DNA of 64,000 nucleotides, from IMG/VR virus record IMGVR_UViG_3300046692_000091, positions 250,815 through 314,814 of that record; one strand, 5' to 3'. The position numbers and the translations under genes are program-made. The notes under the pieces were generated by a model that saw nothing but the letters and a program-made list of their open reading frames with translations, searched no databases and was not told the origin of the DNA. Shown here in pieces: positions 39,367 through 48,007 of the stretch; the first letter of the stretch is position 1; each line of letters starts with the position of its first letter.

Positions 39367-39733
39367 TTAGTAACTCACAAAGGGCGCGTGCTTGTGATAT
39401 ATCAGTGGAGGCAAACTTATCAGACAACGTGTAGTCCATTAATGCGCAAGCTTCTGAGAGCTCACGCATGAGGTCCGGATTAAGATCCGCCCAGATGGTC
39501 CATAGCTTCTTGTATTCGCCCCATGTGTCAATAGACTTGTCCACAGGGGGCTTTCCTTTACCTAGCTTCCAATCACTGGAGCCAGGGGCTATTCCTTTCA
39601 CGTCACATTGATAATGTGCTTCGATGGTGCGTCCATCTGGCATAAGAGCGAACATCGCAGAGTACCGCTTATCTCCTTGCGATGAACACTCATACCCATC
39701 ATACCGCTTCCACTGATACAGTCTTCTTTTCAA
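39353..39733 (-). CDS. Hypothetical phage protein (YECSSxGDKRYSA...DGRTIE.HYQ.DVKG family)
   Basis: Motif common in large phages; probable TTG start inside the polymerase 3' end, start uncertain. Confidence 0.65.
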   Translation of the reverse strand: MKRRLYQWKRYDGYECSSQGDKRYSAMFALMPDGRTIEAHYQCDVKGIAPGSSDWKLGKGKPPVDKSIDTWGEYKKLWTIWADLNPDLMRELSEACALMDYTLSDKFASTDISQARALCELLNERF

Positions 39734-41654
39734 CAGGTACCGATGCTGCAATAGCTTGATCCAGAGTTGGTTCAGCCATACCGATGTCTTGCATGAATGC
39801 CAACAGCATTGTATCCAAACGAGGAGCTGACATGATCTTCTGTGTAATCTCAACACAGTTGACTCGACCAGCTGTCAAGTTAACACCAGCTTCACGACGC
39901 CACAGTTCCGACACACCTTGAATCGCTGAGAATTCCATTACCGTGGTTTCACGTGCAATGTTCAGAATCTGCGATACGTTAGGATAAGTCGATACGATGT
40001 CCAAGTCAGCTACGTGAACGTAAATCAGCGTGTGGTAGTTTGGTAGATCCTTAACACACTTAATACCGTGTTGCCCTGCCATAAACGAAGGCAGTGTAAT
40101 AATCCAGTCTCTATGCGATACCACATACTGGTCGAGTTCATGAACCATCTGATCTGAAGACGAACCGATTACTTGGCCACGTTTCAAATACCAGAAGTGC
40201 ATGTCATCGACAAGACGCTTAGGGTTAGATGCGAAGTTCTTATAATCCGAAGACTTCGAGAACAAAGTAATCGAACGACCTAAGTCATTGATCTTCTCGT
40301 CCAGTTGTTCCAGACGCATGCTGTCGATGATGTTGTAAAGACCATATTTGATCTTGTGCTTGGTTTGCATCTCACGGTGCCATTCGATACCGTTGAGGTT
40401 AGCCACTGCCTCGAACTCCAGCTTACCAAAGTCAACCTTCAAACAAACAACATCACCAATCTTCGCTTCATCTAAAGTGTGAGCTCGCTCATCATTAATG
40501 AACCAGTGTGGAAATGAACCCGGTGTCTCATTCAGTTTCTTCTCACACTTCTTCAAGAATGCTAAAAGATCACCTTCTTTCTTCAGCTCGGTTTCTTCAT
40601 TAACACTAAGCTCTTTACCCAAGATGTAGTTCAGGGCATATGAAGCTTCTTTACCCTTCGCCAAACGCGTTACACGATACGTTGACATCGAGTCGATACA
40701 TTGGAACGTAGCTGGAGCTGTAATCCAATGCCATTGATCCTGAGGGCCACGAGACTTCGATACACCCGAAGCCGTAGTCATCATTGCAGCATCTTTCTTG
40801 AAATGGAAATGACGATAGTTCTTTGGTACGTCAGCATCCGAAAATACATCTTTCGGATCGATACCGTAATCATCCAGTGCTTTCAGAATTCGAGTCATGT
40901 CGAACTCCATGTTCCAGAAAGCAAAGAAATCAGGCTTCCATTCATGCAGTCGTTTAAAACACTGAATCACAATATCAGCTGGAGTCTTAACAACTTCAAC
41001 TTCAATCTTGAGATTACGGCCATGCATCAAAGCTTTCAGCTCTGGGATAGATTCCATCTCACGGTAAGTCTCACCCACCGGATCAGCAATATCATGAACC
41101 CAGTCACCTAGATAAGCCAGATACACATTCTCTTTATGTGTAACAGACATACAGATGATCTGACCATCCTTATCGGATTCGTACACGTTAGTTTCGATGT
41201 CACCACCGGCTACCGAGTTACGAGAGATCAGACCTGGATAACGTTGCTGATAATCATTCTTTAAGCAGCATGATGAACTAACGTCAGAACCGTACAGGTA
41301 TGGACTACGTGATAGGTTACGCAGACGTGGATTAGGGCCTTGTGAATAGTCCCCTAACGTCTTAGCGATATTACGTGCTAAGTTTACCTGAGTCGACTTA
41401 TAACGCTGTAGGTTCTCAAGTACCTCATAATCTTTCTTCTCGGTATGGTTACGACGACCCTTCTGAGTAACAAAGTAAGTACGTTCATAATCCTCCCACT
41501 TCACCAGACGACTAAAATTCTTGCCGCCCTTTAAATGAATTACTTCTTTAACAAAGTGAGCATCATGTTGTTTGCCGAACTGATCCGGTACGTACGTGAT
41601 GTGCTTTGCTTCACGCCCGATAACGTCTTCCGGATTAAACTCAATCGCCGACAT
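39699..41654 (-). CDS. Split family-B DNA polymerase, N-terminal half: 3'-5' exonuclease plus motif A (phiKZ gp82-like)
   Basis: ExoI GDIET, ExoII WNMEFD, ExoIII YNIID, motif A ADLDIVSTYP; ATG 41654 with AAGGAG SD. Confidence 0.9.
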   Translation of the reverse strand: MSAIEFNPEDVIGREAKHITYVPDQFGKQHDAHFVKEVIHLKGGKNFSRLVKWEDYERTYFVTQKGRRNHTEKKDYEVLENLQRYKSTQVNLARNIAKTLGDYSQGPNPRLRNLSRSPYLYGSDVSSSCCLKNDYQQRYPGLISRNSVAGGDIETNVYESDKDGQIICMSVTHKENVYLAYLGDWVHDIADPVGETYREMESIPELKALMHGRNLKIEVEVVKTPADIVIQCFKRLHEWKPDFFAFWNMEFDMTRILKALDDYGIDPKDVFSDADVPKNYRHFHFKKDAAMMTTASGVSKSRGPQDQWHWITAPATFQCIDSMSTYRVTRLAKGKEASYALNYILGKELSVNEETELKKEGDLLAFLKKCEKKLNETPGSFPHWFINDERAHTLDEAKIGDVVCLKVDFGKLEFEAVANLNGIEWHREMQTKHKIKYGLYNIIDSMRLEQLDEKINDLGRSITLFSKSSDYKNFASNPKRLVDDMHFWYLKRGQVIGSSSDQMVHELDQYVVSHRDWIITLPSFMAGQHGIKCVKDLPNYHTLIYVHVADLDIVSTYPNVSQILNIARETTVMEFSAIQGVSELWRREAGVNLTAGRVNCVEITQKIMSAPRLDTMLLAFMQDIGMAEPTLDQAIAASVPVEKKTVSVEAV

Positions 41655-41757
41655 TAGATACTCCTTGAATATGGGTTGAACACGTAGGATTAGGAACGCG
41701 AGTATTTCCTCCAAAGCCTTATCTTTATGATTAATCAACCACCCATGGAAGCGCACC

Positions 41758-42993
41758 ATGTTAAGACAAGTAACAATCGCGAATGAGGCCATCTCCGTAG
41801 ATGTGTCCCGCGAGCTGGGCAAAATGATCCTTGCCCAAGTAAAAGAAATGCAGGAAGAATACGGTCGCTCCAGATCGTTCTCCGGCAAAGATGCAATCGG
41901 TAAACTGAATGACATTATCAACTCGACAGGTATGAAATTTAACCTACGTGTTACCAGTGACAATTTCCTGAATGCAATGTTGATCGTACCGGCCTTTGAA
42001 GGTCATCGTGGTACAGGCTTTACAACACGTGGCCCGTATACCGCATTGATTGCTGGCGGCCTACAAGAATTCATTAAGATGGATTTGGAGAAGTTACAGT
42101 TCTCGGGTAAGATGATCGATGATCACCCAATGGATCTGTATGTAACAGGTGCATGCTTCGATATTAACCGCGCAACTGCCGAAGAGACTACTGGTCTGCT
42201 ATTGCATGAGATCGGCCACAGCATCGACGTATGGGCTACACTGGGCGACTATATCTATCTCAACTACATGTTGACTGAGGGTATTGATGTACTGCTGGGT
42301 AATAAGCGTAACGTACAGAAACTAGAGATCCTCGATCAGAACTGGTTAGAGAAGAATCTTGATCCTGTAGAACGTGATGCCTTTATTAACCACCGTACTG
42401 TAGATGGTGCACGTCGTGCTATTATCTCAGCTTGGAAGAAAGCCCCACGCGGTTATCTGTTCGAGAACAACATGGCCTCTCACAAACGTGATGAGCAATT
42501 CGCTGACTGGTTTGCTGCACGTATGGGCTTTGCTCGTGCGCTAGTTACACTCAACTACAAAGCAGATAAAGAAGGTCAGTGCAATGCCCTGCGGAAAAGT
42601 TTGGTATCTGTTAACGTTGCGCATCTAGCAACGATGGTTGTCTTCTTACCATTCACCATTCTCTGGATGTTGATGGTGGGTGAAACCACCGAACTTGATT
42701 ATGGCGCTCGTTATGATTCGCCATTTGATCGTCCTAACCGACTACGTCTGGAATTGATTGCACAACTTAAGTCGATCAAAGATACTTCGCTACATGCAGG
42801 TATCATGCGTGACATCGAGATCATTGATGACATCCTGAAACAGTATAACAAAGATCGTACGCTGATGGATTTTATGGCTGACCTATCGTCACCAGTAAGA
42901 CGCCGTGAGAAAGATCAACTGCGCCATGAACAGAATTTAGAATCGCTACTCAACAATGATTTGTTTGTAGCTGCCAAACGTTTCAACTCTTAA
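41758..42993 (+). CDS. Head-region protein with HExxH zincin / M48-like peptidase motifs (phiKZ gp83 position)
   Basis: LLHEIGH (aa 150), DEQFADWFAARMG (aa 246), one hydrophobic helix. Confidence 0.7.
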   Translation: MLRQVTIANEAISVDVSRELGKMILAQVKEMQEEYGRSRSFSGKDAIGKLNDIINSTGMKFNLRVTSDNFLNAMLIVPAFEGHRGTGFTTRGPYTALIAGGLQEFIKMDLEKLQFSGKMIDDHPMDLYVTGACFDINRATAEETTGLLLHEIGHSIDVWATLGDYIYLNYMLTEGIDVLLGNKRNVQKLEILDQNWLEKNLDPVERDAFINHRTVDGARRAIISAWKKAPRGYLFENNMASHKRDEQFADWFAARMGFARALVTLNYKADKEGQCNALRKSLVSVNVAHLATMVVFLPFTILWMLMVGETTELDYGARYDSPFDRPNRLRLELIAQLKSIKDTSLHAGIMRDIEIIDDILKQYNKDRTLMDFMADLSSPVRRREKDQLRHEQNLESLLNNDLFVAAKRFNS

Positions 42994-43004
42994 GGTAAAA
43001 GACA

Positions 43005-43445
43005 ATGAGAACTGGTTTCCTTATCGCGCGCATCATGAAAGAACTGAGCGCACCATCCAACAACGATCGTCTGGCCCGTGCCATGTTCGTTGCCTCCGCT
43101 GTTGGTTATCACGTGCCACTGTGCATGGATAAAACTGCAGCCGAATGTGCCGACTCGCACATGAAAACTTTCCGTGACATCTGTGGTTCTGTAAATGAGA
43201 ACCTGGCACTGGACACCAAGAAAGCACAAGACATTTTCCGTGAAGTTATCCGTATCCGTTTTGAACTGGTTAATGGTGTAATCGATCCGGCCATCGTTCA
43301 AGCTGCACTGTGCTCTAGCTCCGCTGAAGATGGTCTGACTCGTCAAGAGTTCGCCATGTCCGAGTGGTTGTCTTCGCGTCCAGACTTTATCCGTTGCCAA
43401 CTCGAAATTGCTGACGTGCTGAAACAGTCTACCGCTGAGGATTGA
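43005..43445 (+). CDS. Conserved virion protein (phiKZ gp84 position)
   Basis: 146 aa, AAGG SD, phage codon bias. Confidence 0.75.
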   Translation: MRTGFLIARIMKELSAPSNNDRLARAMFVASAVGYHVPLCMDKTAAECADSHMKTFRDICGSVNENLALDTKKAQDIFREVIRIRFELVNGVIDPAIVQAALCSSSAEDGLTRQEFAMSEWLSSRPDFIRCQLEIADVLKQSTAED

Positions 43446-43747
43446 TGATGGTTGTCGCAAACGGAATCCCTCGCATTAATAAAGCACATGCTGAGGCACT
43501 AATTGTTGATGAACATGTTCGCTACATTAGTGAGACACGTACAACGATTTGTTCAGTCCGTTTGATAAACGAACAGACAGTCACTGAGTTCGCTACTTGT
43601 GGTGTGGACCAAACATTCGACCCCATTAAGGGTCGAACTATTGCCCGCAAGAAAGTACTGAACGAAATCATCAAACACGAACACTACCTATTACGGCAAC
43701 GTCTCTACGAAGCCAAGAAGGAAAAAGAAAATGGATCAAGAACTTGA
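43445..43747 (+). CDS. Gp49/Sf6-gp66 family protein (PF13876-like), candidate Acb4-type cyclic-nucleotide sponge
   Basis: PRI...H.EALIVDEH, TTIC.V.L.N, C....FD...GR.IAR and EHYLLRQRLYE follow the family pattern as recalled; coupled via TGATG. Confidence 0.65.
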   Translation: MMVVANGIPRINKAHAEALIVDEHVRYISETRTTICSVRLINEQTVTEFATCGVDQTFDPIKGRTIARKKVLNEIIKHEHYLLRQRLYEAKKEKENGSRT

Positions 43748-45068: not shown

Positions 45069-45104
45069 CATAAACGGCTTCCCCTAGGGGAAGCCAATAT
45101 GCCG
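45069..45104. terminator. Bidirectional hairpin (CATAAAC...AATATGCCG type)
   Basis: Perfect palindrome GGCTTCCCCTAGGGGAAGCC (45076-45095) between convergent genes. Confidence 0.75.
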
Positions 45105-45106
45105 TG

Positions 45107-48007
45107 TTATTCAGAAACTTTGTGTTCCAAGAAGTTAACAGTTACGTCATCTTCAATGGTCAACAATTGGTTAGCCAATACTACCATCTTCTTACGGATA
45201 GACAACCGTACAGCATCGTCTTCTACCGTGATGATAGGATAATTCTCTGCACCACCCAAACCACTCAGTTCGTTAGCCAATACGTCATCACCACTAGTGT
45301 CATCCAAACGGGTAACCATATTGGAACGCGAGATTGTCTTCAGCGAGATCTGATCATCCAAGATTTGTTTATCGTTATCAATCAACGAAGGACGAATTGT
45401 AGAGTTAGTGTAAGCAGCAGGTTTCAACCAGTGGGTAATCGCAAAGGCTTGATCGATCTGAATCGTGGCACGTTGACCGTCACGTACACTCACCACCGTA
45501 TCACCGAAGGTTTGTGTTGGGTATACGAACAACTTAGCTTTCTCCAGTAGTCGGTTACCAATCTCTTCGATGTCTGAACGCAACCAGCTTACGAATTCCA
45601 TTGGGATTTCTTTGCGGTATGATACAGCTGCTGTTTCAGTAGCGAAGTAGAACAAGCCATCGACCATCAAGATAGTTACTTCACGCAACAGTTTACGTGG
45701 AGCTACCAGGACTGGTTTATCATTCAACATGACTGGATCATACTTCATGTGAAGCCATTCTTGCACACCTTCTGCATTCAGTACAGGTGTACCTTTGGCA
45801 TGGATCAAGTTCATAATGACTTCGCCATTAGGGCCGATGTCTATGACAGTGTTACCATTCTCATCTGTTTCGTAAATGTTCTCAGTCCAGATCTTAGGAA
45901 CGTTCTCAGTCCATTTCTGGTAGTCTTCCTCACCCAACACAGAACGGTTACGACGCCAGATACGCGTCATGTCATAGCCCAGTGTAATCTCCAGCCGTTC
46001 ACGGGTTACCAGCATCCATTGGTTAGGCAACAGATGTGATTCAACCATGGCATCGATCTCGTTAGGCATATACCCAGGAGTCATCGAATCTACAACCAGA
46101 ATCGAGATATCGAACTCGTTAGCTAGTTTGGTCTTGAAGTTAGTTTGAGCCGAAGAGAAGATCGACATGTTCGTAGTGAACAGCTCACCACCAGTATCAA
46201 GATCGTAACTGGTATCGATATTGAATTCGAATACCCGTTCATTATTCTCAATGGCTACTTGGTGACCATTCACGGAAGCGAAGATATTCTCGCCAGTAGG
46301 ACGATAACCAATCTGACAAACAATCTGCGAGTCATCCAGTGACTGGAACTGTGCAGATGAACTCAAACGAATACGTACCAGATAACCAGTAGGAGTCCGA
46401 GAGATTTCATAAGCATCTACAGTTGCCTGTAAGTTCGAGGTGTCGTTCTCACCTACGAAAGTCTTCTCGGTGATGACAGGACTATCGAGGTAATAAGGAC
46501 GGAAGTCAAAGTTACCATCAGTAGCATCCATCACATAGTGGAATGGCGAATACACAAACCGCGATTCGTTAACCAAACGAGAGATGTCTTCTGGATCGGA
46601 AGCAATGATGCTTGCAAGTTCTGAATCGGGAACCATAGAAACTTTACCACTGGCGAATCGATATAACATCGACGGCAGGATAGTAATACGTTCACCGTTG
46701 TCTGCAGTATGTGCAGAAGCGGCAATAGATTCCATGTTGATACGTAGCTGAGACATTACACAACCCGCACCAGACACTACGTCAAGAGCTTGAGGCTTAC
46801 CCAAACGGCGAGAGGCCAGGAATTGTCGATCGGTAATGTTGTCGATGTTGGATACCAGCGTGTACCCACGTTGATCGAGTTTCGCCACCATCTGTACATC
46901 AGTAATGGGTAGATCCGGATCGCCCATTGTGTTGTCAATGGCACGATCTCGAAGAGTAACGAAATCCAAGGCATTGGCCCCACCTGTCACGCGGTTAAGG
47001 TTCAGTGCTTGCTTGATACTGAATGTGTTAAGTGGAGATACGTAAGTAGTGTCATCATCGATAGGGTTAAACATCGCCTGGAATTGATCAGGACGGAAGT
47101 CGGCCATCGATACATCTAATGCACCTTGTGAGGTATAGATGTCAACTCGGATCTTACCTGTAGCCATACCAGTGTTAGTATAGACCGTAGGGATAGCTAC
47201 CTGTAGTGATTGACCAACCACACGCAGAACAGCAGTAACCTTCAATGGGTTGTATACTTGATCAGTGTGAGTAGTTAGGATTTCAACCCAAGGGGAATTG
47301 GTACCACCATCATTCAGGTATACCCGAGCAAAGTAAAACTTATCACTGAAAGCATAAGCGTGTTCAAACAGAGTCGCTGGGCTTAGTGCATCGGTATTCG
47401 TTTGAATACGGAATTGCTTAACCGGGATCTTCAGACGAACCACTCGGTTCCGCTGCATGCGCAACATGTCCCACTTAACTTGGTTGGTCTTCAATGTTTC
47501 TACAGGAGATACCGAAGTGCCATCGTAGACGATCTGTAAGCCACCATGACGTAGTACCCGTAGTTCAATCGGATATTGCATAGTGAATGGAATCGTACCA
47601 CCCAGGAATTGAGTCAAGCGAGGAATGACTAGTTTACGTGCACCTTGATCACCATAAGGAACAGCTTTCTGAATGATCTCTTCATAACCGAGATACAGTT
47701 GGAACTCAGTTGTTGCAGGCGTACTGAATCGACCGATGTAATCATCCGACGACATGTGGTAATAAGTCTCTTCCTGGGTCAAAGCCATCCGTGCGTTTAG
47801 TTTACGCATCTGGGCTTCCATCTCAGTAATGGCCATGGTCACACCGAGCGTACCGCATTCCATAGAAGCTACGAATGGGATAGTCGCATCAGGGACATCG
47901 TAAATACCTTTGCCTTGGAGTTGTTGATCGAGTTCCTCCAGAGCAATCTGCTGCATCTGGCTAGGGTTACGTCGAGCATTATAAATCCGATCTTTATATT
48001 GACTCAT
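45107..48007 (-). CDS. Large virion structural protein, probable baseplate wedge (phiKZ gp87-like)
   Basis: 966 aa, beta-rich; TGGANALDF..LRDRAI and LPITDVQ resemble baseplate-J/gp6-type segments; synteny. Confidence 0.65.
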   Translation of the reverse strand: MSQYKDRIYNARRNPSQMQQIALEELDQQLQGKGIYDVPDATIPFVASMECGTLGVTMAITEMEAQMRKLNARMALTQEETYYHMSSDDYIGRFSTPATTEFQLYLGYEEIIQKAVPYGDQGARKLVIPRLTQFLGGTIPFTMQYPIELRVLRHGGLQIVYDGTSVSPVETLKTNQVKWDMLRMQRNRVVRLKIPVKQFRIQTNTDALSPATLFEHAYAFSDKFYFARVYLNDGGTNSPWVEILTTHTDQVYNPLKVTAVLRVVGQSLQVAIPTVYTNTGMATGKIRVDIYTSQGALDVSMADFRPDQFQAMFNPIDDDTTYVSPLNTFSIKQALNLNRVTGGANALDFVTLRDRAIDNTMGDPDLPITDVQMVAKLDQRGYTLVSNIDNITDRQFLASRRLGKPQALDVVSGAGCVMSQLRINMESIAASAHTADNGERITILPSMLYRFASGKVSMVPDSELASIIASDPEDISRLVNESRFVYSPFHYVMDATDGNFDFRPYYLDSPVITEKTFVGENDTSNLQATVDAYEISRTPTGYLVRIRLSSSAQFQSLDDSQIVCQIGYRPTGENIFASVNGHQVAIENNERVFEFNIDTSYDLDTGGELFTTNMSIFSSAQTNFKTKLANEFDISILVVDSMTPGYMPNEIDAMVESHLLPNQWMLVTRERLEITLGYDMTRIWRRNRSVLGEEDYQKWTENVPKIWTENIYETDENGNTVIDIGPNGEVIMNLIHAKGTPVLNAEGVQEWLHMKYDPVMLNDKPVLVAPRKLLREVTILMVDGLFYFATETAAVSYRKEIPMEFVSWLRSDIEEIGNRLLEKAKLFVYPTQTFGDTVVSVRDGQRATIQIDQAFAITHWLKPAAYTNSTIRPSLIDNDKQILDDQISLKTISRSNMVTRLDDTSGDDVLANELSGLGGAENYPIITVEDDAVRLSIRKKMVVLANQLLTIEDDVTVNFLEHKVSE

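What the first reader, a model, noticed from the sequence alone, without database searches (positions are those of the whole stretch)
43445..43747. Diverged Gp49/Acb4-like sponge embedded in a late virion operon
The sequence follows the N4 Gp49/Sf6 gp66 pattern (PRx...HxEALIVxEH; TIC-x-x-x-L-x-N; C....FD..xGRxIAR; YLLRQRLYE). As I recall, the anti-CBASS 3'3'-cGAMP sponge Acb4 belongs to this family. The usual G(E/T)SAC..P.NF and KIW.LEGY segments are replaced by EFATCGVDQTF and EIIKHEHY, suggesting altered ligand specificity or repurposing. It overlaps both neighbouring head genes (TGATG; 17-nt overlap), implying late expression or packaging. The phage nucleus does not shield against nucleotide-signalling defences.
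Basis: partly seen in the sequence, partly recalled or inferred. Interest (0 to 1): 0.7.

Follow-up and report, generated by a model that had tools for sequence, protein, structure and literature searches.

The report
Acb4-family sponge gene in jumbo-phage capsid operon
This 100-residue gene of a phiKZ-like jumbo phage is a genuine member of the known Acb4 family of proteins that soak up bacterial alarm nucleotides. It sits, unusually, between two capsid genes, but its activity, ligand and timing are untested.

Summary
The ORF at 43445-43747 (+) is real and under purifying selection (dN/dS 0.12-0.15). It matches Pfam PF13876 at 43.2 bits (cut-off 27), higher than the founding sponge SPO1 Acb4 (35.5 bits). 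A profile of its homologues finds PDB 9E4W (SPO1 Acb4 with 3'3'-cGAMP) at E 2.6e-10. Its AlphaFold2 model (pLDDT 88) has 9E4W as top structural match (Foldseek probability 1.0; Z 9.8).

It lies between homologues of the phiKZ inner-capsid vertex proteins gp85 and gp86, overlapping both. The same slot is filled in at least eight named Pseudomonas chimalliviruses and in 19 of 23 IMG/VR loci. It is cleanly empty in phiKZ and in close relatives of this phage, so the gene is inherited vertically but dispensable.

The "replaced" motifs are shared by the whole chimallivirus subfamily. The one notable pocket change in this clade is loss of the base-stacking aromatic (SPO1 F48 becomes Q44).

Packaging is not supported. 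The protein has no N-terminal extension or protease motif, and the 201phi2-1 orthologue is not annotated as a virion protein although its four neighbours are.

Close homologues are already listed in the Acb4 paper's family table. Verdict: a new member of a known kind in an unusual context. Tetramer formation, ligand and timing remain untested.

The parts
43445..43747 (+). Acb4-family (PF13876) gene, 100 aa; alternative start at 43448
   Evidence: PF13876 43.2 bits against a cut-off of 27. Profile A3 hits 9E4W at E 2.6e-10. AF2 model pLDDT 88.4. Foldseek and VIA-align top hit is 9E4W. dN/dS 0.12-0.15.
43437..43441 (+). GAGGA Shine-Dalgarno inside the 3' end of the gp85 homologue
   Evidence: Read from the sequence: 3 nt before ATG 43445 and 6 nt before ATG 43448.
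43005..43445 (+). phiKZ gp85 homologue (inner capsid vertex-binding protein); its stop overlaps the Acb4-like start
   Evidence: PF25615 E 4.4e-61 and phrog_14569. Role taken from PMC11297242.
43731..45068 (+). phiKZ gp86 homologue (vertex-binding protein); its start lies 17 nt inside the Acb4-like gene, and its ribosome-binding site (AAGGA) is within the Acb4-like 3' end
   Evidence: PF25617 E 3.7e-129; sequence.
41758..42993 (+). First gene of the unit, the phiKZ gp84 homologue (virion protein in relatives)
   Evidence: phrog_2767 E 1e-69. Same position as PhiPA3 086, 201phi2-1 gp145 and phiKZ gp84.
45075..45096 (.). G+C-rich palindromic hairpin between the convergent gp86 and gp87 homologues; likely two-way terminator closing the unit
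   Evidence: Terminator-like site, 9 pairs with 6 G-C. No sigma-70-like promoter and no plus-strand terminator-like site was found between 41758 and 45068.
45107..48007 (-). Convergent phiKZ gp87 homologue (virion protein in relatives)
   Evidence: Same position and size as phiKZ gp87, PhiPA3 090 and 201phi2-1 gp149.

Best explanation
The gene encodes a true Acb4-family protein. [quoted passage not shown]

By analogy with SPO1 Acb4, N4 Acb4 and the Acb4 domain of phage Ab09 gp59, it most likely forms a homotetramer. The inter-subunit pockets would sequester cyclic-dinucleotide immune signals of CBASS type, such as 3'3'-cGAMP or c-di-AMP, so that host effectors are not activated.

It has no detected sigma-70-type promoter of its own. 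It is probably translated from the gp84-gp85-[Acb4-like]-gp86 structural mRNA by coupling to its neighbours. The sponge would then be made in the cytoplasm together with capsid proteins rather than as an early gene, and would not be a virion part.

It is an old, vertically inherited and dispensable accessory gene of a lineage of Pseudomonas chimalliviruses.

Shown: family membership, fold, synteny, co-divergence, purifying selection and repeated clean loss.

Inferred: tetramer formation, ligand binding, anti-CBASS effect, timing of expression and cytoplasmic location.
For: Family and fold:
- PF13876 above the curated cut-off.
- A profile of its homologues finds SPO1 Acb4 (9E4W) at E 2.6e-10, with nothing else below E 1.
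- The 13 best Foldseek hits are all 9E4W chains (probability 1.0, TM 0.60-0.72, rmsd about 2 A over 69 residues). VIA-align gives Z 9.8 against 7.8 for the next entry.

Family function:
- All eight diverse PF13876 proteins tested bound 3'3'-cGAMP and were modelled as tetramers.
- N4 Acb4 binds c-di-AMP at 111 nM.
- The Acb4 domain of Pseudomonas phage Ab09 gp59 is a tetramer by SEC-MALS.

Pocket positions kept or conservatively changed relative to SPO1 Acb4:
- K36 to R32, F62 to F58, N63 to D59, K81 to K77.
- Two further positions carry the same residue as N4 Acb4 (T45 and C52).

Selection and descent:
- dN/dS 0.12-0.15.
- Identity to relatives tracks that of gp85 and gp86 over 19 loci.
- The chimallivirus copies fall in one clade with SH-aLRT 97.

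Dispensability:
- The slot is empty in phiKZ.
- It is empty in L018, L019 and L022, whose gp85 is 85% identical to the window's, through a clean indel of about 290 bp.

Not a virion part: 201phi2-1 gp147 is not annotated as virion-associated while its four neighbours are. The orthologues in Psa21, PhiPA3, Phabio and Noxifer are likewise 'hypothetical' among 'virion structural' neighbours.
Against: - No oligomer or ligand prediction could be obtained. The one complex job was not folded.
- The aromatic that stacks on guanine in SPO1 Acb4 (F48; F54 in N4) is Q44 here. Three other contacts differ: Y57 to G53, I66 to K62 and T70 to I66.
- Characterised acb4 genes lie in early or anti-defence gene clusters. 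Strict linkage to two capsid genes over deep divergence is atypical for an anti-defence gene and could point to a capsid-related role.
- For PhiPA3, only sparse RNA-library contigs cover the orthologue.
Confidence: 0.6

Rival explanations
1. Same fold and sponge mechanism, but the ligand has shifted in this clade. It might bind a cyclic trinucleotide, a type III CRISPR cyclic oligoadenylate, or a pyrimidine-containing signal instead of cGAMP or c-di-AMP.
For: The stacking aromatic is lost only in the window clade (Q, S or E). Other chimallivirus clades keep H, W, F or Y there. Pocket-equivalent positions differ strongly between chimallivirus clades but are fixed within each. Chimalliviruses are known to be hit by cA3/NucC signalling.
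Against: Pocket positions vary across the whole family, yet all eight tested members bound 3'3'-cGAMP. Sequence alone cannot predict the ligand. No binding data or docking are available.
Confidence: 0.2
2. The protein is packaged into the capsid with the gp85/gp86 vertex complex and injected with the DNA, so that a sponge is present from the first minute. This would parallel phiKZ Tad1 (gp184).
For: phiKZ gp184/Tad1 is a minor capsid protein of the same vertex-binding complex, lodged next to gp86. Its C-terminal sponge part is reported to be released by the head protease and injected. The gene is locked between gp85 and gp86 and coupled to both.
Against: The protein is only the 82-position domain plus short tails, with no N-terminal anchoring extension. 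No S/A/G-x-E site is present; that motif is recalled from the literature and the check was made by eye on the translation. 201phi2-1 gp147 is not among the annotated mass-spectrometry virion proteins, whereas gp145, 146, 148 and 149 are. phiKZ and close relatives build capsids without it.
Confidence: 0.07
3. The protein is not a sponge. It is either a non-packaged helper for assembling the vertex complex, or an RNA- or ribosome-binding protein that uses its dsRBD-like fold.
For: The gene shows strict synteny and co-divergence with gp85 and gp86 across pairs down to about 25-40% identity. The fold also resembles ribosome hibernation factors, RF2 domains and dsRBDs at Z 5.5-7.8.
Against: The same weak fold matches are reported for the proven sponge SPO1 Acb4. 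The match to Acb4 itself stands above them (Z 9.8) and is backed by sequence homology. The gene is cleanly absent from phages whose gp85 is 85% identical, so it is not needed for assembly.
Confidence: 0.1

Closest known systems
Bacillus phage SPO1 Acb4 (gp1.3; PDB 9E4W)
   Same: Same Pfam family. Profile-level homology at E 2.6e-10 and the same fold (Z 9.8; about 23% identity over 69-79 residues). Same size, about 100 aa, single domain. Basic residues at the K36 and K81 positions, and the F62 and N63/D positions, are kept.
   Different: The stacking F48 is Q44; E49 is T45; Y57 is G53; I66 is K62; T70 is I66. The SPO1 gene lies in a cluster of small uncharacterised genes, and its binding activity appears by about 15 min after infection. 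This one lies inside a capsid operon.
Escherichia phage N4 Acb4 (RefSeq EPNV4_gp48, the namesake of PF13876)
   Same: Phage of a Gram-negative host. Shares T at the E49 position, C at the V56 position, and the F and N/D positions. It is a proven sponge, binding c-di-AMP at 111 nM.
   Different: N4 keeps the aromatic (F54) and has a 17-residue insert. Its gene sits next to a Tad2-like gene, and N4-like phages carry Acb4 in an anti-signalling hotspot. It scores 119.5 bits against PF13876, compared with 43.2 for the window protein.
Orthologues in Pseudomonas chimalliviruses: Psa21 gp95, RVTF4, PhiPA3 gp088, 201phi2-1 gp147, PA1C, Phabio gp131, Noxifer gp086, Viktualia
   Same: Same slot between the gp85 and gp86 homologues and the same subfamily clade. 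The Psa21 protein is about 80% identical (80-81% by method). The Psa21, PhiPA3, 201phi2-1, Phabio and Noxifer proteins are already listed in Table S3 of the Acb4 paper.
   Different: All are annotated as hypothetical and, as far as the searched literature shows, none has been tested. Pocket residues differ between clades.
phiKZ Tad1 (gp184), the packaged and injected sponge
   Same: A nucleotide-signal sponge of a chimallivirus, linked to the gp85/gp86 vertex-binding complex.
   Different: An unrelated fold and family. gp184 has an N-terminal capsid-wedged part and is proteolytically processed. The window protein has neither feature. The window genome keeps only the N-terminal capsid part of gp184.

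Membership tests
Acb4 / Pfam PF13876 (Phage_gp49_66) | Sequence match to the family model above the curated cut-off | tested here: met
   43.2 bits against a cut-off of 27, E 5.8e-11, profile positions 2-82 of 82. SPO1 Acb4 itself scores 35.5 bits.
Acb4 / Pfam PF13876 (Phage_gp49_66) | Detectable homology to the structurally characterised founder (SPO1 Acb4, 9E4W) | tested here: met
   Single-sequence and close-clade profiles found nothing. The 76-sequence profile A3 hits 9e4w_A at E 2.6e-10, and the next hit is at E 1.4.
Acb4 / Pfam PF13876 (Phage_gp49_66) | Small single-domain protomer: N-terminal helix, three antiparallel strands, long C-terminal helix | tested here: met
   AF2 model pLDDT 88.4: helix 13-19, strands 20-28, 33-40 and 45-51, helix 60-95. 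Top Foldseek hits are all 9E4W. Z 9.8.
Acb4 / Pfam PF13876 (Phage_gp49_66) | Homotetrameric pinwheel assembly | not tested
   The only complex job (four copies plus 3'3'-cGAMP) was not folded by the tool. No other multimer tool was available.
Acb4 / Pfam PF13876 (Phage_gp49_66) | Ligand-contact residues of the inter-protomer pocket | tested here: inconclusive
   Of the 11 SPO1 contacts, maps 5 as kept or conservatively changed: R32, F58, D59, K77 and L83. The L83 (SPO1 L89) mapping was not reproduced in later alignments. Two more match N4 Acb4 (T45, C52). The stacking aromatic is Q44. These positions vary across the whole family, although all tested members bind cGAMP.
Acb4 / Pfam PF13876 (Phage_gp49_66) | Binds cyclic-dinucleotide immune signals and blocks CBASS | not testable with these tools
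   Needs purified protein and phage challenge assays.
Acb4 / Pfam PF13876 (Phage_gp49_66) | Usual context: cluster of small early or anti-defence genes (typical, not defining) | tested here: not met
   The gene lies between capsid vertex genes gp85 and gp86 and overlaps both. SPO1 and N4-like contexts differ.
Packaged, injected sponge (phiKZ gp184/Tad1 type) | N-terminal capsid-anchoring part plus head-protease processing | tested here: not met
   The domain spans residues 12-87 of 100. No S/A/G-x-E tripeptide is present in the translation (motif recalled from the literature).
Packaged, injected sponge (phiKZ gp184/Tad1 type) | Protein detected in purified virions | tested here: not met
   By annotation only. 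201phi2-1 gp147 has no virion note, while gp145, 146, 148 and 149 are 'identified as virion protein by mass spectrometry'. A small protein could have been missed.
dsRBD-like RNA- or ribosome-binding proteins | Fold similarity to dsRBD or hibernation factors, with RNA-binding function | tested here: inconclusive
   Z 5.5-7.8 to HPF, YfiA, RF2 and dsRBDs. This is below the Acb4 match and is also reported for SPO1 Acb4 itself. There is no sequence homology.

The most novel reading that the evidence does not exclude
The chimallivirus Acb4 subfamily may be functionally tied to the capsid vertex complex. In one form, it is carried into the head in small amounts with gp85/gp86 and delivered at injection, like phiKZ Tad1/gp184. 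In another, it is deliberately co-produced with capsid proteins because those proteins trigger host cyclic-nucleotide signalling. That would be an anti-defence gene hard-wired into a structural operon for hundreds of millions of generations instead of living in a variable island.
Probability: 0.1. Interest if true: 0.7.

Novelty: new member of a known kind. Interest (0 to 1): 0.35.

Why it matters
A 2026 review states that Tad1 is so far the only anti-defence protein described in jumbo phages. An Acb4-family sponge present in most Pseudomonas chimalliviruses examined would be a second, testable one. It would bear on how nucleus-forming phages deal with signalling defences that the nucleus cannot block.

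The fixed position inside a capsid operon, the co-divergence with the capsid genes and the repeated clean losses give a natural experiment. The losses may reflect sponge-sensing systems such as Panoptes or PanDA, but that link is an inference.

The family, its mechanism and even the close homologues are already catalogued, so the gain is incremental.

Tried and rejected
- phmmer of the protein alone, and hmmsearch of the close-clade profile A1, against PDB sequences found nothing even at E 10. Only the broader profile A3 reached 9E4W.
It was redone without that row.
- The complex prediction (four copies plus 3'3'-cGAMP) was counted but not folded. It gives no evidence either way.
- NCBIfam has no model for the window protein or for SPO1 Acb4.
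- No RNA run holds this phage, which comes from a rhizosphere metagenome.
- RNA-library contigs from PhiPA3-related runs cover parts of the orthologue at depths like its neighbours. They are sparse, unstranded and without time information, so they show at most presence.
- I tested whether Acb4-slot occupancy and phiKZ Tad1 (gp184 C-domain) exclude each other. They do not. PhiPA3 and 201phi2-1 have both, the L022 record has neither, and phiKZ-like records have Tad1 only.
- I considered an Acb4-gp86 fusion made by frameshifting at the overlap. gp86 lies in the +1 frame in the overlapping cases checked (my arithmetic on the coordinates). However, overlap lengths differ (8-20 nt), Phabio has no overlap, and I saw no shared slippery site. 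The shared frame is explained by common descent, so I rejected this as unsupported.
- Literature searches found no paper linking Acb4 with jumbo or nucleus-forming phages, and none on 201phi2-1 gp147.

Full report
**The observation.** The window has an ORF at 43445-43747 on the + strand. It is 100 aa long and has a second in-frame ATG at 43448. Its ATG shares one base with the TGA stop of the upstream gene. A GAGGA at 43437-43441 lies 3 nt before the first ATG and 6 nt before the second, so 43448 may be the start actually used.

The protein matches Pfam PF13876 (Phage_gp49_66) at E 5.8e-11 and 43.2 bits. That is above the curated cut-off of 27 and covers almost the whole model. It also matches phrog_322 at E 5e-22. 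The upstream gene is a PhiKZ_gp85 homologue (PF25615, E 4e-61). The downstream gene is a PhiKZ_gp86 homologue (PF25617, E 4e-129).

**The source.** The window is part of a 314,814-bp virus record judged complete, and it carries one PF13876 copy. The only sequencing run that holds the whole stretch is a rhizosphere metagenome. The nearest named phage is Pseudomonas phage Psa21, at 79% nucleotide identity over part of the region. This is an uncultured phiKZ-like (Chimalliviridae-type) jumbo phage, probably of a Pseudomonas host.

**Family membership.** The Acb4 paper states that SPO1 Acb4 (gp1.3) belongs to PF13876. It describes a tetramer that binds four 3'3'-cGAMP molecules in inter-protomer pockets (PDB 9E4W). 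It also reports that all eight homologues tested bound 3'3'-cGAMP (bioRxiv 10.1101/2024.12.30.630793).

Direct sequence searches of the PDB with the protein or its close clade found nothing. I therefore searched 1.84 billion representative proteins with a clade profile, which gave 438 hits at E <= 0.001. I aligned 76 domain-sized relatives (A3). That profile hits 9e4w_A at E 2.6e-10, and nothing else falls below E 1.

An AlphaFold2 model built on A3 has mean pLDDT 88.4 and the expected order of elements. The 13 best Foldseek matches in the PDB are all chains of 9E4W, with probability 1.0, TM 0.60-0.72 and about 2 A rmsd over 69 residues. VIA-align gives Z 9.8 for 9E4W and 7.8 for the next entry. 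The weaker matches (hibernation factors, release factor, dsRBDs) are the same ones the Acb4 authors reported for SPO1 Acb4 itself.

The window protein scores higher against PF13876 than SPO1 Acb4 does, 43.2 against 35.5 bits. 'Diverged' is therefore only true relative to the family consensus.

**The two 'replaced' motifs and the pocket.** The profile consensus does read ..t-g-e-s-a-c-v-n-p-e-n-F.. and ..k-i-w-e-l-E-g-Y, and the window differs at both places. All chimallivirus copies differ there too. SPO1 Acb4, a proven sponge, also departs from the consensus at both.

I mapped the SPO1 ligand contacts named in the paper onto the window protein:

| SPO1 Acb4 | Window | N4 Acb4 |
|---|---|---|
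| K36 | R32 | T42 |
| F48 | Q44 | F54 |
| E49 | T45 | T55 |
| V56 | C52 | C62 |
| Y57 | G53 | V63 |
| F62 | F58 | F68 |
| N63 | D59 | N69 |
| I66 | K62 | L72 |
| T70 | I66 | Y76 |
| K81 | K77 | E87 |

An eleventh contact, SPO1 L89, mapped to L83, but the C-terminal part did not align reproducibly, so that position is left open.

N4 Acb4 binds c-di-AMP at 111 nM. It shares T, C, F and N/D with the window protein but keeps the aromatic.

The clearest clade-specific change is the loss of the base-stacking aromatic. It is Q, S or E in the window clade, H in the PhiPA3 clade, and W, F or Y in the Noxifer clade. Pocket positions vary across the whole family, yet binding of cGAMP is general. An altered ligand is therefore possible but cannot be read from the sequence.

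**Context and evolution.** The same order of genes recurs widely: DNA polymerase on the opposite strand, then gp84, gp85, the PF13876 gene and gp86, then a convergent gp87.
- It is found in Psa21, RVTF4, PhiPA3 (gp088), 201phi2-1 (gp147), PA1C, Phabio, Noxifer and Viktualia.
- It is found in three metagenomic contigs picked from unlabelled branches of the tree.
- It is found in 19 of 23 IMG/VR loci fetched through gp85.

In a tree of 102 family members, the chimallivirus copies fall in one 39-row clade with SH-aLRT 97. The window clade is sister to the PhiPA3/201phi2-1 clade, with support 93. Identity of the PF13876 protein to the window copy falls in step with that of gp85 and gp86, from 90% down to about 31-38% in the most distant loci. 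dN/dS is 0.12-0.15. This is the pattern of an old, vertically inherited gene under purifying selection.

The gene is nevertheless dispensable. In phiKZ, gp85 ends 10 nt before gp86 starts. A phiKZ-like record (L030) also lacks it. So do three loci whose gp85 is 85% identical to the window's (L018, L019, L022). In L022 the only difference is a clean indel of about 290 bp, and gp86 has its own ribosome-binding site. Sponge-sensing defences that are triggered by Acb4 exist (PanDA and Panoptes) and could select for such losses. That link is my inference.

**Expression and packaging.** Between 41758 and 45068 the scans find no sigma-70-like promoter and no plus-strand terminator-like hairpin. A G+C-rich palindrome at 45075-45096 closes the unit against the convergent gp87 homologue. 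Chimalliviruses use their own RNA polymerases, so the promoter scan is weak evidence. The overlaps do argue for translational coupling with capsid genes.

No RNA data exist for this phage. In RNA libraries that hold PhiPA3 sequence, short contigs cover the orthologue at depths like its neighbours. This shows presence at most.

Packaging has a precedent. phiKZ Tad1 is gp184, a minor capsid protein lodged next to gp86. Its C-terminal part is reported to be released by the head protease and injected. The window protein differs in three ways:
- It is a bare domain with no anchoring extension.
- It has no S/A/G-x-E tripeptide. The motif is recalled from the literature and I checked for it by eye on the translation.
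- 201phi2-1 gp147 lacks the virion note that gp145, 146, 148 and 149 carry from mass spectrometry.

Orthologues in four other annotated phages are likewise 'hypothetical' among 'virion structural' neighbours.

**Verdict.** The gene is a genuine Acb4-family member and most likely a tetrameric cyclic-dinucleotide sponge. I give this 0.6, with a further 0.2 for the same mechanism with a shifted ligand. It is probably made together with capsid proteins and not packaged.

Close homologues (Psa21 at about 80% identity, PhiPA3, 201phi2-1, Phabio, Noxifer) are already in the family table of the Acb4 paper. RVTF4's copy is annotated with the family name. No paper in the searched library links Acb4 with jumbo phages. 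A 2026 review names Tad1 as the only described jumbo-phage anti-defence protein.

It is therefore a new member of a known kind, with an unusual and well-conserved genomic setting. Tetramer formation, ligand, anti-defence activity, timing and absence from virions all remain to be tested.

Noticed in passing
own genome G000:C1:117220-117387 (locus L039:1360-1640), outside the window: The phage has a 92-aa ORF matching only residues about 62-118 of phiKZ gp184, the capsid-wedged N-terminal part. The C-terminal Tad1 sponge part is missing. Psa21 and the L022 record show the same. PhiPA3 and 201phi2-1 hold a separate homologue of the Tad1 C-domain. So the Tad1 module is gained, lost or split among chimalliviruses, independently of the Acb4 slot.
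   Followed up: partly
L022:2941-2952 (also L018 and L019), compared with window 43445-43730: Close relatives whose gp85 is 85% identical lack the Acb4-like gene through a clean indel of about 290 bp. Their gp86 has its own ribosome-binding site. This is a natural presence/absence pair for experiments.
   Followed up: yes
L011:3311-5782: One metagenomic chimallivirus contig carries two consecutive PF25617 (gp86-like) genes after the Acb4-like gene, that is, a tandem duplication of the vertex protein.
   Followed up: no
window 43731 and the orthologous junctions in L001-L004, L008, L010-L013: Wherever the Acb4-like gene overlaps gp86 (8, 11, 17 or 20 nt in most cases, 32 nt in Psa21), gp86 is in the +1 frame. 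In Phabio (L007) the two genes are in the same frame, separated by the stop and one codon. This is probably inherited junction geometry, and I saw no shared slippery site.
   Followed up: partly
window 45075-45096: A perfect G+C-rich palindrome lies between the convergent gp86 and gp87 homologues. It is a likely two-way terminator.
   Followed up: no
L040:5633-6483 (phage N4): In the N4 RefSeq record the PF13876 protein is locus EPNV4_gp48 (119.5 bits). The adjacent EPNV4_gp49 is a Tad2-like protein. The Pfam name 'N4 Gp49' therefore does not match current locus numbering, and N4 carries two sponge-family genes side by side.
   Followed up: partly
window 39699-41963 (-) and 41758 (+): The listed 754-aa ORF of the DNA polymerase homologue begins at a TTG that overlaps the gp84 homologue. 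The real start is probably an internal codon near 41655. That would leave a divergent intergenic region of about 100 bp, which should hold the promoters of both units.
   Followed up: no
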